Part shown: positions 6,383-58,675 of the stretch, in pieces | Position numbering within the stretch: position 1 is the stretch's first letter | Layout of the letters: every line of letters starts with the position of its first letter | Made by a program: the position numbers and the translations under genes | IMG/VR virus record: IMGVR_UViG_3300024259_000010 | Location: 1 to 64,000 of that record | Strand: one strand, 5' to 3' | DNA length: 64,000 bases | The notes under the pieces: generated by a model | What the model was told of the DNA's origin: nothing | Seen by the model: only the letters and a program-made list of their open reading frames with translations | The model's database searches: none

Positions 6383-6739
6383 ATGGATATTACAGAGGTA
6401 CAAGAAAAAGAATTATTAACAGATAGATTCACTAAACGTTATTCAAGTGTTAACTCACTTATTACATTTTTGATTGCTACCGATGATTATATTACAGTGG
6501 GCGATATTTTGGATGTTGTAAATAACCAAGGGCAGTTCGAATACTTGGACGACGCTGATATTGAAATGGTAGTAGGGTTTGATAAACCTGCTTCTGATAA
6601 CCAAGTTTTATTCGCATTAGTAGATCTTGAATCATGGGGTCTTATTGAAAATATTAAGACTATGGAAGATGGAGTGGAAGTTACTTACATTCGGTGGGGA
6701 ACTAATGATAAAGGTGAACTTCCTACTGTAGCTGAATAA
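6383..6739 (+). CDS. Hypothetical protein
   Basis: 118-aa ORF with AAGGAG RBS. Confidence 0.8.
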   Translation: MDITEVQEKELLTDRFTKRYSSVNSLITFLIATDDYITVGDILDVVNNQGQFEYLDDADIEMVVGFDKPASDNQVLFALVDLESWGLIENIKTMEDGVEVTYIRWGTNDKGELPTVAE

Positions 6740-7814: not shown

Positions 7815-7819
7815 ACTAT

Positions 7820-7875
7820 CTTAAAATCTGTCGACTATTGCAGTCGTGTCGGTTCGATTCCGGCCTTGGGTACCA
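7820..7875 (+). pseudogene. Orphan 3' half of a second tRNA-Leu(UAA)
   Basis: CTTAAAA loop, variable arm, T arm GTCGG-TTCGATT-CCGGC, CTTGGGT-A-CCA; no matching 5' half nearby. Confidence 0.75.
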
Positions 7876-51629: not shown

Positions 51630-51838
51630 GTAATCTGGGGTCTAACCAACCCCTAATAATTTTCTCACATAAGTATAATAATAAATAAGGAGATAGCAAT
51701 GAATAAGGTATATACTAATGAGTCCACAACAGATCAAGTACTAGATAGTCTATTAGACGCTTTTCTAGGAAGTATCTGGAAGTAAGAAAAATAAATAATC
51801 TTGGGGGAGATTATTTTTTTTCATTCTTATTATAAGTA

Positions 51839-51846
51839 TATATTAC
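51839..51846 (+). promoter_or_regulatory. Early promoter TATATTAC
   Basis: Exact motif, intergenic. Confidence 0.8.
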
Positions 51847-52835: not shown

Positions 52836-52879
52836 ATCTAATCATGGGGTGTTAATACCACCCCTTACAATTTTAAAAC

Positions 52880-53308
52880 GGGCCTGCCTGGTTTCGACAG
52901 TACAATGGAATTCATAACTACAAGTAGAGGATGATCGTCGGCCTCTTTAAACATCGGTCAACAATTAGTTGGAACGAAAGTGATCAACTTCCCTAGTGCT
53001 CGCGCTCTTGCAGCGTAATCACGTCCCTTTTAATTAAGGGAGGGCTTGAGGATACCTAGAATTCTCTGGGATGAAGTATCTTCTAACTTAGGTATACCCA
53101 AAGAGGTGTGCTTAATACAATTAAGCAGAGAGCCCTATAGCAGCAATGCTATTTAAATAGTTAGGATCACTATATGGAAAAGAGATCTGAGTGTGAGTAG
53201 TGCTGTATATACTATTTGGTTTACTAGTAAAGTAAAACTAGGTAAAAACTTGTAACAACGTTATGTTGGAAATTATATTGGACGAGGGTTCGACTCCCTC
53301 CAGGTCCA
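52880..53308 (+). ncRNA. ssrA: tmRNA; tag (A)GTKVINFPSARALAA at 52971-53018
   Basis: 5' GGGCCTGCCTGGTTTCGACAG; 3' GGACGAGGGTTCGACTCCCTCCAGGTCCA with a G3-U wobble; P2 pairings TACAAGT/ACTTGTA and ATAAC/GTTAT; internal ORF ending ALAA-stop. Confidence 0.95.
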
Positions 53309-53390
53309 AATCCACAATAATTACTGCCTCCACGCGGCGTGGGTTGGATACTATACTTAGGTATAGGCTAAATGTAATAAGAAAGGAATA

Positions 53391-53909
53391 ATGATGAGTA
53401 AGATTAATGATACTGTTGTTATAGCATATACTAAAGGGTATAGAGTGCTTGATAATGGTGTTGTTAAAAGCCACATGGGTACTCTAAGAAAAACTATAAA
53501 CCATGGTGGGTATGAGAAGGTTAATGTAGATATTGGTAACAGTAAAAAGTTTCCAGTACCTGTACATAAACTTCAAGCCTACCAGAAGTTTGGAGAAGAG
53601 GTATTCCATGAAGATGTGCAAGTTAGACATCTAGATGGTGACTCAACGAACAATGAATCAGACAATATATCAATAGGATCGGCAAGTGATAATGCTATGG
53701 ACAAACCAGAATCATTGAGAAAATCACAAGCTCGTAGAGCAAGTCATTCCAGTAAAGATATTATATCGGTTGAAACTTGGCTTATGGTTGACGAGCATCA
53801 ACGTGGTGGATGTAGCTACAGTGAACTGTCATTGATATTCGGTATATCTAAATCTACATTATCATATCACTATTCACAAACTGCTAAGCGAACAGCATTG
53901 TCTGCTTAG
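53391..53909 (+). CDS. HNH homing endonuclease with C-terminal HTH
   Basis: VHKLQAY, VRHLDGDSTNN...N...GSASDN; C-terminal SYSELSLIFGISKSTL. Confidence 0.88.
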   Translation: MMSKINDTVVIAYTKGYRVLDNGVVKSHMGTLRKTINHGGYEKVNVDIGNSKKFPVPVHKLQAYQKFGEEVFHEDVQVRHLDGDSTNNESDNISIGSASDNAMDKPESLRKSQARRASHSSKDIISVETWLMVDEHQRGGCSYSELSLIFGISKSTLSYHYSQTAKRTALSA

Positions 53910-53985
53910 TCCACCATCTTCTCTCCTTGTATCCTTCTCCTGTCCTTTGAGGCAGTGCTAGGATTGGAGAGAGTCTTATTTTAAT

Positions 53986-54127
53986 GGATGAGTGACAGAA
54001 GTAATGTAGGCAAGCCGGATAGTGACCGGACAGTACCAGACGGTACCAATCAAAAATAGATTGATTGAGTTGAAGCCGCTAGTAATCGGTTCTAGTATGT
54101 AGGTGTCAAATCCTACCTCATCCATCA
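53986..54127 (+). ncRNA. tRNA-like RNA with an expanded multi-hairpin anticodon domain (142 nt)
   Basis: Acceptor GGATGAG/CTCATCC plus A, D-like ACA/TGT, variable arm CTAG/CTAG, T-like GTAGG-TGTCAAAT-CCTAC; three hairpins replace the anticodon loop. Confidence 0.6.
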
Positions 54128-54260: not shown

Positions 54261-54815
54261 ATGAAGAAGGAAACAGGTACTAAATTAAACATGATGAGTG
54301 ATGATAATATACTCAGTGTCAACTCACCGTTGGGACGTGTAGGTGGACCATACGTAGTAATTCATAAAGATGTGAAAGAACGTTGGGCATTAGTGGCCAT
54401 GGCGTTCGATGATAACCCAACTCTCGGTATGAGATGGTTCTGGGGATCAGGCGGGAGTCCGTTTGCACGTCAAGCTACGTGGTTCATCATACCAAAGGAC
54501 TTACATAATTCAATGCTTGACAGATTGTGTTCATCAGTTAGTATGAAACAACAGGTGGTTGATTTCTTATGTAATAAGATCCCAGGTAAAGAACTTAAAT
54601 CATTTTACAATGATAAAATTACACCAATCCCAAGATCATTAGCAGATCTTGTAGCGGATGGGTCGATGATACCCATACCCCAAGTCTCGTGGCTTGGAAA
54701 ATGTATTACTTGTGGGGCAGAAGTGCATCAGCAATGTAACTATGATTCTCCAACCGATCCTGGAATGGCAATAGAGACTGGTAACTATATACACAAAGAA
54801 CGTGAATATAAATAG
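54261..54815 (+). CDS. Hypothetical protein
   Basis: 184 aa; GMRWF and W...P motif. Confidence 0.75.
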   Translation: MKKETGTKLNMMSDDNILSVNSPLGRVGGPYVVIHKDVKERWALVAMAFDDNPTLGMRWFWGSGGSPFARQATWFIIPKDLHNSMLDRLCSSVSMKQQVVDFLCNKIPGKELKSFYNDKITPIPRSLADLVADGSMIPIPQVSWLGKCITCGAEVHQQCNYDSPTDPGMAIETGNYIHKEREYK

Positions 54816-55085: not shown

Positions 55086-55107
55086 GTAGATCAATCCTTT
55101 ATGGATA

Positions 55108-57088: not shown

Positions 57089-58675
57089 ATGAAAAAAGAA
57101 GAAGGTGAAGTAGATATCAATCTTCTTGTACCATTTTATTTAATGAGTTCATTCTTATATTACAAAGAGGACCTAAGTCCCCTAACTGATCATAAGTATG
57201 ATATGCTATGTAAGAAACTCCTGAAGCATTGGGATGACATTGAGCATCAGCATAAGAAGTATATAGATAAAGAAGCACTTAGTTCTGGAACTGGTTACTA
57301 CATCAATTGGGATGAGTTGCCATCTAGGATAAAAGGCGGTGCAAAGCATTGGTATGAGGTAGCTAGGTCAGAAATGCCTAGTTTGAATAAATTTATAAAA
57401 AAAGGAAAGTCTATGAATGATGGACAACAGGTGTTTGTATTATCATGTGGTGATATGGATAGCATTATGGCTTCAAAGATTATTTGCAAAGCCATCCCAG
57501 GGAGCATACATCTTGCTGCCTCCAGAAAACAAATAGATGTCCCAAATGGTTCTCTAATATATTTAGTGAGACCTTACATGGGTTATCGTAGAATTTGTGA
57601 TCTCTTACATAATTATGAAGTACGTCTAATTGATTACGATGTGAGTGATGAATATAAGTCGAAAGATCTTCTTGAATCAAATGGTTGTAAAACTACTTGG
57701 GTTAAGACCAAAGAGAATGTTCTATCAGAAGTTGTCTGGGATATGTTCTTCAATGGTAAAGAGAAGCCAGAGATTATCAAACATGTTCGTGATTACATGA
57801 AATGGGAATTCCAAATAGAAAACACATTAGCTATTCATTATGGGTATGAGTTGATCATACCTAAGTTTGGCTCAAATAGCTCTGTGTTTGGTAAGCTTTT
57901 GGATAACGACGTAGATGCTCTAAATCATCTCAAGGCAGGTGGTCTGGAAATAAAAGGGTACGTAGACTTCGTTAATTCAGAGTTATTAAAAGAACTTGGA
58001 TTTTCAGCAACTATAGATGGACGACCAGTTATCTGTGCAAATATTGCTGGAGTGAATTCACTATTCTTTAATGTGGATGGAACTCAAATAGATTCATATG
58101 ATATTGCTCAGACATTTTATTATGTACCAGCTAACAATATGGTCCACAGTGCTATCTATGCTATCTCAGATGATATCGATGTGGGTAAGCTAGCATCAGA
58201 TCATTTTCAAGGTGGTGGTAATAGAGGAGCTGCTGGTTTCAATACTAGAGGATTACCATTTGATAAGATTGAAGCTGAGACTATGGGCACTACAGATTAT
58301 GAAGGTATGATCAAAGCTTCAATTAAATCATCTAACATTATTCAGTATGTTAAATCTAAAATACATGGATGGCCTCGTAATACGTTCTATGGAACATGGA
58401 GAGGTATGTCTGCAGTATTTTACAACACACCATTCTTAATTGGTACCGACTTCTTTGAGAAGATGGATACTCGTGGTTGTGATGTACGAGTAACATTCTG
58501 TATGTTAGGTAATGGACATTATCGAATTGCATGTAAAGGTAAAGATGGGTTCCCATTGCCTGATGAATTCGGTAAGAAGGTTGATGCATATTCAATTGAG
58601 ACACTCCCTGAATTAGTTCACGCTACATTCACTAAGGGTGAAATCAAGAAAGATATGTTTTTCGAGAAATCATAA
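57089..58675 (+). CDS. LigA-Ia-like N-terminal domain fused to a degenerate DHH/DHHA1 phosphoesterase
   Basis: SFLYYKEDLSPLTDHKYDML resembles the NAD-ligase Ia module; GDMDS, LIDYD (for IDHH), VRDYMKWEF, GGGNRGAAGF. Confidence 0.65.
   Translation: MKKEEGEVDINLLVPFYLMSSFLYYKEDLSPLTDHKYDMLCKKLLKHWDDIEHQHKKYIDKEALSSGTGYYINWDELPSRIKGGAKHWYEVARSEMPSLNKFIKKGKSMNDGQQVFVLSCGDMDSIMASKIICKAIPGSIHLAASRKQIDVPNGSLIYLVRPYMGYRRICDLLHNYEVRLIDYDVSDEYKSKDLLESNGCKTTWVKTKENVLSEVVWDMFFNGKEKPEIIKHVRDYMKWEFQIENTLAIHYGYELIIPKFGSNSSVFGKLLDNDVDALNHLKAGGLEIKGYVDFVNSELLKELGFSATIDGRPVICANIAGVNSLFFNVDGTQIDSYDIAQTFYYVPANNMVHSAIYAISDDIDVGKLASDHFQGGGNRGAAGFNTRGLPFDKIEAETMGTTDYEGMIKASIKSSNIIQYVKSKIHGWPRNTFYGTWRGMSAVFYNTPFLIGTDFFEKMDTRGCDVRVTFCMLGNGHYRIACKGKDGFPLPDEFGKKVDAYSIETLPELVHATFTKGEIKKDMFFEKS

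What the first reader, a model, noticed from the sequence alone, without database searches (positions are those of the whole stretch)
53986..54127. tRNA mimic whose anticodon loop is replaced by a three-hairpin domain
It has a perfect 7-bp acceptor (GGATGAG/CTCATCC) plus A, a class-II-like D arm and variable arm, and a T arm with an 8-nt loop. After GGC (pairing with GCC) come CCGG/CCGG, GTACC/GGTAC and AATCAA/TTGATT hairpins instead of an anticodon. The D loop lacks GG and the end is ATCA. The insert is structured, which argues against random decay. Options: a decoy for anticodon nucleases or synthetases, a Y-RNA/YrlA-like tRNA mimic, a tRNA with a miniature intron, or a mini tmRNA-like RNA (but position 3-70 is A-U, so not Ala).
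Basis: partly seen in the sequence, partly recalled or inferred. Interest (0 to 1): 0.75.

Follow-up and report, generated by a model that had tools for sequence, protein, structure and literature searches.

The report
Anticodon-less tRNA-like gene in jumbo phage
A marine jumbo phage carries, just after its tmRNA gene and a homing-endonuclease gene, a 142-base gene shaped like a serine/tyrosine-type tRNA whose anticodon arm is replaced by three small hairpins; it is most likely a remodelled tRNA gene that can no longer decode, and there is no evidence yet for a new function.

Summary
It has a perfect 7-bp acceptor and a 3-bp D hairpin. A GGC/GCC stem encloses three perfect hairpins. A long extra arm follows, then a T arm with an 8-nt loop, discriminator A, and TCA instead of CCA. 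ARAGORN (also in intron mode) and Rfam do not call it.

Its T arm and acceptor are those of class-II tRNAs. The same 24-mer without the extra G occurs almost only in tRNA-Ser/Tyr genes.

The upstream HNH gene belongs to a family whose stop codon abuts a same-strand tRNA gene in 37 of 83 loci, so the element sits in a "tRNA slot". One relative has tmRNA-HNH-tRNA-Arg there. A syntenic relative has tmRNA-HNH and no RNA gene.

No homologue of the whole element was found. The genome lacks Ro/Rsr, and it holds two other broken tRNA-like pieces. Fold stability is reached by about 7% of windows in this genome.

Best reading: a remodelled, non-decoding class-II tRNA gene, probably still cut out by tRNA-processing enzymes. 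An active tRNA mimic is possible but unsupported. YrlA, a mini-intron tRNA and a mini-tmRNA are rejected. Interest is modest.

The parts
51837..51846 (+). Promoter-like motif TATATATTAC; nearest one upstream of the element
   Evidence: 15 exact copies on the + strand and 0 on the - strand in the window. It contains the phiKZ promoter core TATATTAC (PMC7058600 Table 2). The next copy is at 55106.
52880..53308 (+). One-piece tmRNA gene (tag GTKVINFPSARALAA, G3:U70, no encoded CCA)
   Evidence: ARAGORN; Rfam RF00023 at 100.3 bits; ends read.
53391..53909 (+). HNH homing endonuclease gene (172 aa) of a family that abuts tRNA genes
   Evidence: PHROG HNH families at E 1e-16 and a Pfam HNH_3 match below the curated cut-off (21.6 vs 24.8 bits). 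In 37 of 83 related loci the stop codon lies -35 to +24 nt from a same-strand tRNA start.
53919..53973 (+). Leader hairpin between the HNH stop codon and the element, followed by a T-rich run
   Evidence: -21.4 kcal/mol, z -2.5; also kept in the larger fold.
53986..53992 (+). Acceptor 5' strand GGATGAG; predicted RNase P site between 53985 and 53986
   Evidence: It pairs perfectly with 54117-54123.
53995..54007 (+). D-like hairpin (ACA / GAAGTAA / TGT); U8, A14 and A21 equivalents kept, no GG
   Evidence: compared with tRNA-Ser genes.
54009..54077 (+). GGC...GCC stem enclosing three hairpins (54015-54029, 54033-54046, 54047-54067) and an unpaired linker (54068-54074)
   Evidence: The only natural variant seen, G>T at 54072, lies in the unpaired linker.
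54078..54096 (+). Long extra (variable-arm-like) hairpin GCTAG / 9-nt loop / CTAGT
54099..54116 (+). T arm GTAGG / TGTCAAAT / CCTAC (8-nt loop: canonical TTCAAAT plus one G)
   Evidence: It is identical, apart from the extra G, to T arms of tRNA-Ser/Tyr genes.
54117..54127 (+). Acceptor 3' strand CTCATCC, discriminator A (54124), then TCA (one base away from CCA)
   Evidence: The three true tRNAs of the phage encode CCA; the tmRNA does not.
54261..54815 (+). Downstream ORF (184 aa, no known family), probably in the same transcription unit

Best explanation
The element is a remodelled class-II (Ser/Tyr-type) tRNA gene. It sits in the 'tRNA slot' directly downstream of a tRNA-abutting HNH homing-endonuclease gene, which itself follows the phage's tmRNA gene.

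Shown:
- It keeps a tRNA acceptor stem, T arm, core nucleotides and a long extra arm.
- It has lost the anticodon arm (replaced by a 3-bp stem with three hairpins), the D-loop GG, the 7-nt T loop and the encoded CCA. It therefore cannot decode.

Inferred:
- It is transcribed with the tmRNA, the HNH gene and ORF184 from the phiKZ-type promoter motif at 51837.
- Because the 7-bp acceptor stem stacked on a T arm is what RNase P and the 3' end/CCA enzymes recognise, the host cuts it out as a tRNA-shaped RNA of about 139 nt. This also separates the HNH and ORF184 messages.
- I judge it most likely an evolutionary by-product: a disabled tRNA gene that still folds and is still processed, possibly built by internal duplication of tRNA arms. 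I do not think it is a conserved new RNA with a function of its own.
For: - tRNA origin. The 3' 24-mer without the extra G occurs in 7 phage and 34 bacterial loci, almost all tRNA-Ser or tRNA-Tyr. Model R1 built from the element scores tRNA-Ser genes best among foreign tRNAs (L120 at 22.1 bits; T4 tRNA-Ser at 25 bits). Positions 8-26 have the same 19-nt length as in tRNA-Ser genes.
- Slot. In 37 of 83 loci of the HNH family, a same-strand tRNA gene starts -35 to +24 nt from the HNH stop codon, and six tRNA identities are involved, including Ser-TGA. L181 reads tmRNA-HNH-tRNA-Arg. In L120 a tmRNA is followed 5 nt later by tRNA-Ser.
- Not conserved. The syntenic relative L178/L179 (RecJ 53%, 528-aa protein 56%, HNH 46% identity) has tmRNA-HNH but no RNA gene after it. 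No homologue of the whole element exists in the viral, metagenome or genome collections.
- Other broken tRNA pieces in the same genome. A 3' fragment lies at 7815-7873. A tRNA at G000:213973-214042 (Rfam 43 bits) has a 4-nt anticodon loop and an imperfect acceptor.
- Fold stability is not exceptional for this genome.
- One transcription unit is inferred from the strand-specific promoter motif.
- Hairpins 1 and 2 look like an anticodon arm and a class-II variable arm in the right order and spacing, so their structure may be inherited (weak internal similarity).
Against: - All 39 predicted pairs are intact (38 Watson-Crick, 1 G-U), although several loops are altered. A long-decaying pseudogene would be expected to carry stem mismatches.
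- The three-hairpin domain is well structured on its own.
- U8, A14 and A21 equivalents and the G53-C61 equivalent are kept.
- The one natural variant lies in an unpaired linker.
- The element is identical in several seawater samples, although this is probably one phage population.
- T4 species 1 RNA shows that phages can keep stable tRNA-like RNAs of this size.
- Expression and processing were not observed.
Confidence: 0.5

Rival explanations
1. It is an active, non-decoding tRNA mimic. The processed RNA presents the acceptor, T and variable-arm face of a class-II tRNA to a host factor. That factor could be a tRNA-targeting defence enzyme acting on the acceptor end or body, a synthetase, or a tRNA-processing or modifying enzyme. 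The RNA would act as a sponge or decoy, or as an aminoacylated carrier kept out of translation by its missing anticodon and altered elbow.
For: - All helices are perfect, and the domain that replaces the anticodon arm is structured.
- The tRNA core nucleotides are kept.
- It is placed in an inferred early transcription unit with the tmRNA.
- G1-C72, G2-C71 and A3-U70 match the tRNA-Ser genes compared.
- From general knowledge, SerRS and LeuRS do not read the anticodon.
- T4 rnaC is a stable tRNA-like RNA of 139 nt with an extended anticodon arm.
- A second anticodon-less tRNA-like gene lies in the same genome.
Against: - It is a singleton, absent from the syntenic relative.
- No partner gene was identified: ORF184 gave nothing, and the genome has no CCA-adding enzyme, SmpB, RtcB, Rsr or synthetase.
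- The D-loop GG is lost and the T loop is enlarged, which argues against a faithful elbow.
- The fold z-score is ordinary for this genome.
- There are no expression data.
Confidence: 0.27
2. It is a YrlA-type Y RNA: a tRNA-like module fused to a Ro60/Rsr-binding module that tethers Ro to a nuclease.
For: The architecture is similar to Calothrix units (L158:6363-6503 and 6558-6699). These are tRNA-like, have a roughly 70-85-nt module in place of the anticodon loop, give sub-threshold YrlA matches and lie just upstream of a Ro60-like ORF. YrlA RNAs with 7-bp acceptors are cut by RNase P and receive CCA (PMC4201824).
Against: - No Rfam YrlA match at E<=10.
- No TROVE gene in the genome.
- The conserved module of the Calothrix units and the GNCGAA motif are absent.
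- R1 aligns only the tRNA core to the Calothrix units.
Confidence: 0.03
3. It is a functional tRNA interrupted by a small intron, or a miniature tmRNA-like RNA.
For: Hairpin 1 has a 7-nt loop with U at the second position and a purine at the sixth, like an anticodon loop.
Against: - ARAGORN intron mode finds nothing, and there is no group I match.
- Removing the insert leaves a 3-bp stem and no anticodon.
- Reading hairpin 1 as the anticodon arm leaves the D stem unpaired and a 52-nt insertion before the T arm.
- There is no G3:U70, and no tag-like frame ending in a hydrophobic tail.
Confidence: 0.03
4. It is a chance fold, with no relation to tRNA.
For: 6.8% of windows in this genome fold as well relative to their shuffles.
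Against: - 24 of 25 bases of the T arm plus acceptor strand match class-II tRNA genes.
- The closing helix starts and ends exactly where a tRNA would.
- It sits in a slot that holds tRNA genes in related HNH loci.
Confidence: 0.02

Closest known systems
Class-II tRNA genes (tRNA-Ser/Tyr) of large phages, and tRNA pseudogenes in phage tRNA clusters
   Same: The acceptor stem, T arm, U8, A14, A21, 3-bp D stem and long extra arm match. The position directly after a tRNA-abutting HNH gene and near a tmRNA also matches.
   Different: There is no anticodon arm, the T loop has 8 nt, the D loop has no GG, CCA is not encoded and there are about 55 extra nucleotides. ARAGORN and Rfam do not call it.
Bacteriophage T4 species 1 RNA (rnaC, 139 nt) in the T4 tRNA cluster
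   Same: It has a similar size and a tRNA-like T arm, an extended arm where the anticodon arm would be, and a long extra hairpin. It is encoded at the edge of RNA genes that also hold a homing-endonuclease gene, segB. From general knowledge, it is a stable RNA of unknown function.
   Different: There is no detectable homology (R1 10.1 bits, E 0.16). rnaC has a canonical 7-nt T loop, an imperfect acceptor and one long arm rather than three hairpins.
YrlA (bacterial Y RNA with a tRNA-like domain), including the tandem Calothrix units upstream of a Ro60-like gene
   Same: A tRNA-like scaffold carries a structured module on the anticodon side. [quoted passage not shown]
   Different: There is no Ro/Rsr gene, no YrlA model match, no conserved Ro-module sequence and no canonical D/T loop pair.
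tmRNA tRNA-like domain
   Same: It has an acceptor plus T arm without an anticodon, lacks encoded CCA like the phage's own tmRNA, and is a neighbouring gene.
   Different: It has A3-U70 instead of G3:U70, has a D hairpin and an extra arm, and has no message part or pseudoknots.

Membership tests
Canonical tRNA (Rfam RF00005 / ARAGORN) | Cloverleaf with a 5-bp anticodon stem and a 7-nt anticodon loop | tested here: not met
   Only a 3-bp stem (GGC/GCC) enclosing three hairpins. ARAGORN finds nothing at default settings. Rfam has no tRNA match even at E<=10.
Canonical tRNA (Rfam RF00005 / ARAGORN) | 7-bp acceptor stem, 5-bp T stem, 7-nt T loop, and D-loop GG for the elbow | tested here: inconclusive
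   The acceptor and T stem are perfect. The T loop has 8 nt (TGTCAAAT) and the D loop has no GG.
Class-II tRNA (Ser/Tyr/Leu type) by descent | Sequence similarity of the acceptor and T arm, a 3-bp D stem and a long extra arm | tested here: met
   The 24-mer matches are almost all tRNA-Ser/Tyr genes. R1 scores tRNA-Ser best among foreign tRNAs.
Intron-containing tRNA | An intact tRNA remains after removal of an insert at a recognised intron site, and the intron is of a known type | tested here: not met
   ARAGORN -i finds nothing at normal thresholds. There is no group I match. No anticodon remains.
tmRNA | G3:U70, a tag reading frame with a resume codon, and pseudoknots | tested here: not met
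   It has A3-U70. There is no tmRNA call for the element. Low-threshold ARAGORN tmRNA output was spurious.
YrlA / bacterial Y RNA | Match to the YrlA covariance model | tested here: not met
   No match at E<=10. The Calothrix units reach 37-47 bits.
YrlA / bacterial Y RNA | Encoded next to a Ro60/Rsr (TROVE) gene | tested here: not met
   PF05731 is absent from the 235.8-kb, 91%-complete genome, while the control genomes respond.
YrlA / bacterial Y RNA | Binding by Ro60 | not testable with these tools
   Needs a binding assay; the host is unknown.
T4 species 1 RNA (rnaC) type | Sequence or structure homology to rnaC | tested here: not met
   R1 scores rnaC at 10.1 bits, E 0.16. Only the general plan is shared.
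T4 species 1 RNA (rnaC) type | A stable RNA cut out of a tRNA-cluster transcript | not testable with these tools
   No RNA run could be listed.
HNH-tRNA cassette | A same-strand tRNA(-like) gene directly downstream of this HNH family | tested here: met
   37 of 83 related loci have this arrangement. Here the gap is 76 nt and is filled by a hairpin.

The most novel reading that the evidence does not exclude
A phiKZ-like marine jumbo phage expresses early, alongside its own tmRNA, an anticodon-less mimic of a class-II tRNA. Host tRNA enzymes mature it, and it acts as a sponge or decoy for a host factor that recognises the acceptor, T and variable-arm face of tRNA-Ser/Tyr, or as an aminoacylated carrier excluded from the ribosome. 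A second anticodon-less tRNA-like gene at G000:213973-214042 would be part of the same strategy.
Probability: 0.12. Interest if true: 0.8.

Novelty: new variant of a known kind. Interest (0 to 1): 0.35.

Why it matters
If it is only a disabled tRNA gene, it is a clear example of how tRNA genes next to homing endonucleases in phage RNA-gene clusters are remodelled yet still fold. It is also a caution that tidy hairpins can be inherited tRNA arms rather than new design. If it is an active mimic, it would add a phage-encoded, anticodon-less class-II tRNA look-alike to the current picture of phage-host conflict over tRNAs. It would also give a tractable counterpart to the still unexplained T4 species 1 RNA. 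The side finding may be of more general use: an HNH family whose stop codon abuts tRNA genes and which is fixed next to tmRNA genes in a clade of jumbo phages.

Tried and rejected
- Homologue searches for the whole element all returned nothing beyond the same phage. These were blastn against phages, an exact 25-mer and degenerate patterns in viral, metagenome and genome collections, model R1 over about 1.1 Mb of phage loci and five whole records, and flanking proteins. Covariation could therefore not be tested.
- Population data gave identical copies in several samples and one variant, G>T at 54072 in an unpaired linker. This is too little for inference.
- No RNA run could be listed.
- No repeat of the insert occurs elsewhere in the genome, so it is not a repeated mobile hairpin element.
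- The internal duplication test was weak (14 of 18 identical, p about 0.1).
- The minus-strand 68-aa ORF over the element has no family match.
- ORF184 gave no functional lead.
- tmRNAs of other phages are only 37-50% identical to this one. The tmRNA-tRNA-Ser order in L120 is therefore suggestive, not proof of orthology.
- The literature search for T4 species 1 RNA found nothing usable in the library.

Full report
**Setting.** The window is the first 64 kb of a 235,833-bp virus record, 91% complete by CheckV and about 35% G+C. The record is also present as a JGI metagenome contig, and near-identical copies occur in several seawater assemblies. Its proteins match cultured phages only distantly; the best are phiKZ-like and other jumbo phages. 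A strand-specific motif, TATATATTAC, has 15 exact copies on the + strand and none on the - strand. It contains the promoter core reported for phiKZ (PMC7058600 Table 2). ARAGORN finds three tRNAs (Leu-TAA, Met-CAT, Arg-TCT, all with encoded CCA) and one tmRNA in the whole genome.

- a perfect 7-bp acceptor;
- a 3-bp D-like hairpin whose loop has no GG;
- a GGC/GCC stem enclosing three perfect hairpins;
- a 5-bp extra arm with a 9-nt loop;
- a 5-bp T stem with the 8-nt loop TGTCAAAT;
- discriminator A, then TCA.

The fold has z = -3.36, and the enclosed domain alone has z = -3.6 to -3.7. Of 943 windows, 6.8% reach z <= -3.1 and 2.3% reach the same energy. "The insert is structured" is therefore weaker evidence here than it looks. 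ARAGORN (also in intron mode at normal thresholds) and Rfam (down to E = 10) do not call the element.

**It descends from a class-II tRNA.** The 3' end (T arm plus acceptor strand) differs from a 24-mer by only one extra G in the T loop. That 24-mer occurs in 7 phage loci, all tRNA-Ser or tRNA-Tyr. It also occurs in 34 bacterial loci, almost all tRNA-Tyr or tRNA-Ser. A covariance model of the element (R1) scores tRNA-Ser genes best among foreign tRNAs (L120 at 22.1 bits; T4 tRNA-Ser at 25 bits). The 5' strand GGATGAG-TG matches the GGAAGAG-TG and GGATGGG-TG of those tRNA-Ser genes, and positions 8-26 have the same 19-nt length. U8, A14 and A21 equivalents and the closing G-C of the T stem are kept. 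TCA is one base away from CCA.

**Context gives the strongest lead.** The gene order is tmRNA (52880-53308), an HNH endonuclease gene (53391-53909), a 76-nt gap holding a stable hairpin, the element, then ORF184. The nearest promoter motifs are at 51837 and 55106, so I infer one transcription unit.

Homologues of the HNH protein led to relatives:
- L178/L179 are syntenic with window 44.5-60.6 kb (RecJ-like 53%, dUTPase 50%, HNH 46%, 528-aa protein 56%, 494-aa protein 37% identity). They carry a tmRNA and the HNH gene at the same spacing. After the HNH gene there is an AT hairpin and an unrelated ORF, with no tRNA-like RNA.
- L181 carries tmRNA, HNH (47% identity) and then a normal tRNA-Arg(CCT).
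- A profile search of this HNH family in viral contigs gave 80 more loci. Counting L178, L181 and L182, in 37 of 83 loci the HNH stop codon lies -35 to +24 nt from the start of a same-strand tRNA gene. The identities are Val-GAC, Cys, Ser-TGA, Met, Glu and Arg-CCT.
- In another phage, L120, a tmRNA is followed 5 nt later by tRNA-Ser(TGA).

The element therefore occupies a slot that normally holds an ordinary tRNA gene, and the content of that slot turns over between relatives.

**No relative of the whole element exists in what I could search.** Details are under "tried and rejected". The only variant is G>T at 54072, in the unpaired linker. The phage genome has no Ro/Rsr, CCA-adding enzyme, SmpB, RtcB or class-II synthetase core, so any maturation would depend on the host. 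No RNA run could be listed.

**The same genome holds other damaged tRNA pieces.**
- A 3' fragment lies right after tRNA-Leu at 7815-7873: a hairpin, a T arm, an acceptor strand and ACCA, with no 5' partner.
- A gene at G000:213973-214042 matches the Rfam tRNA model at 43.1 bits. Its anticodon loop has only 4 nt and its acceptor is imperfect. It lies just after a promoter motif.

**Where the extra hairpins may come from.** Hairpin 1 is CCGG with a 7-nt loop that has U at the second position and a purine at the sixth. Hairpin 2 has a 5-bp stem and a 4-nt loop. Together they have the form, order and spacing of an anticodon arm followed by a class-II variable arm. The stretch before the extra arm resembles the end of a tRNA-Ser D loop. 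Positions 27-44 and 88-104 share 14 of 18 bases, which is not significant (p about 0.1). An internal partial duplication of tRNA arms would give a larger, well-folded RNA without selection for a new structure. I could not prove this.

**Weighing the readings.**

For a relic:
- it is a singleton and is absent from the syntenic relative;
- ordinary tRNAs fill the slot elsewhere;
- four canonical features are lost;
- other broken tRNA pieces lie in the genome;
- the fold z-score is ordinary for this genome.

For an active RNA:
- every one of the 39 pairs is intact although the loops have changed;
- the core nucleotides are kept;
- the sole variant is unpaired;
- it sits in an inferred early unit beside the tmRNA;
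- T4 rnaC is a precedent. Its fold shows a canonical T arm, a long extended arm and a 10-bp extra hairpin in 139 nt, though it shows no homology to the element.

I put about 0.5 on a non-decoding remnant that is probably still excised by RNase P and the 3' end enzymes, which would punctuate the HNH and ORF184 messages. I put about 0.27 on an active mimic. The rest goes to the rejected options and the unknown.

**Rejected options.**
- YrlA. The plan resembles the Calothrix units I came across: tRNA-like, with a roughly 70-85-nt module in place of the anticodon loop, sub-threshold YrlA matches, and a Ro60-like ORF next door. Here the model match, the Ro gene and the conserved module are all missing (features from PMC4201824).
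- Mini-intron tRNA and mini-tmRNA fail their defining features (A3-U70).
- A chance fold is excluded by the tRNA-specific matches.

**Verdict.** This is a real, tRNA-derived, anticodon-less gene. It is best filed as a new variant of a known kind: remodelled tRNA genes and tRNA-like RNAs in phage RNA-gene clusters. Interest is modest unless expression and a partner are shown.

Noticed in passing
window 52880-53308: The phage encodes a one-piece tmRNA (tag GTKVINFPSARALAA, G3:U70, no encoded CCA). The genome has no SmpB gene.
   Followed up: partly
window 52880-53909; L178:3510-4709; L181:293-1307: The tmRNA-HNH gene pair is conserved, with a spacer of about 76-83 nt, in relatives whose proteins are only 30-56% identical. 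This endonuclease lineage therefore seems fixed next to the tmRNA gene.
   Followed up: partly
L183-L262 (e.g. L194:2501-3043, L224:2501-3101): In 37 of 83 loci of this HNH family the stop codon abuts or overlaps (-35 to +24 nt) the 5' end of a same-strand tRNA gene. Six different tRNA identities are involved.
   Followed up: partly
window 7815-7873: A 3' tRNA fragment lies directly after tRNA-Leu(TAA): a hairpin, a canonical T arm, an acceptor strand and ACCA, with no matching 5' strand.
   Followed up: partly
G000:213973-214042 (L175:274-343), outside the window: A second anticodon-less tRNA-like gene. It scores 43.1 bits on the Rfam tRNA model and has canonical D and T arms, but its anticodon loop has only 4 nt and its acceptor is imperfect. 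It lies just after a TATATATTAC motif.
   Followed up: partly
window, e.g. 7127, 11475, 12546, 51837, 55106: The motif TATATATTAC has 15 exact copies, all on the + strand and upstream of genes. It contains the phiKZ promoter core TATATTAC.
   Followed up: partly
L158:6046-6856 (Calothrix brevissima NIES-22): A tandem array of five tRNA-like units of 120-145 nt, each with a conserved module in place of the anticodon loop. They give sub-threshold Rfam YrlA matches and lie directly upstream of a Ro60-like ORF.
   Followed up: partly
L031:8457-8566; L086:7878-7983; L098:13191-13291; L079:9671-9770: tRNA-shaped genes of 98-110 nt in other large phage contigs that ARAGORN does not call. They have 7-bp acceptors, canonical T arms and unusual middle parts.
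   Followed up: no
L065:1907-1980: A Pistol ribozyme match (54.5 bits) in a 163-kb phage contig that also carries a 560-nt tmRNA.
   Followed up: no
window 57089-58675: A 528-aa protein combining a DNA-ligase-like N-terminal NAD-binding domain (Nlig-Ia) with a DHH phosphoesterase-like part. It is 56% identical in the relative L178.
   Followed up: no
window 52866-53634 in runs X5 and X8: Contigs about 91-93% identical over the tmRNA and HNH regions show that a related lineage exists in seawater. One weak 151-nt contig joins 53634 to 54868, which would skip the element and ORF184.
   Followed up: no
L006-L124: Most phage contigs sharing this tmRNA 3' end carry circularly permuted (two-piece) tmRNA genes, often beside large tRNA clusters.
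   Followed up: no
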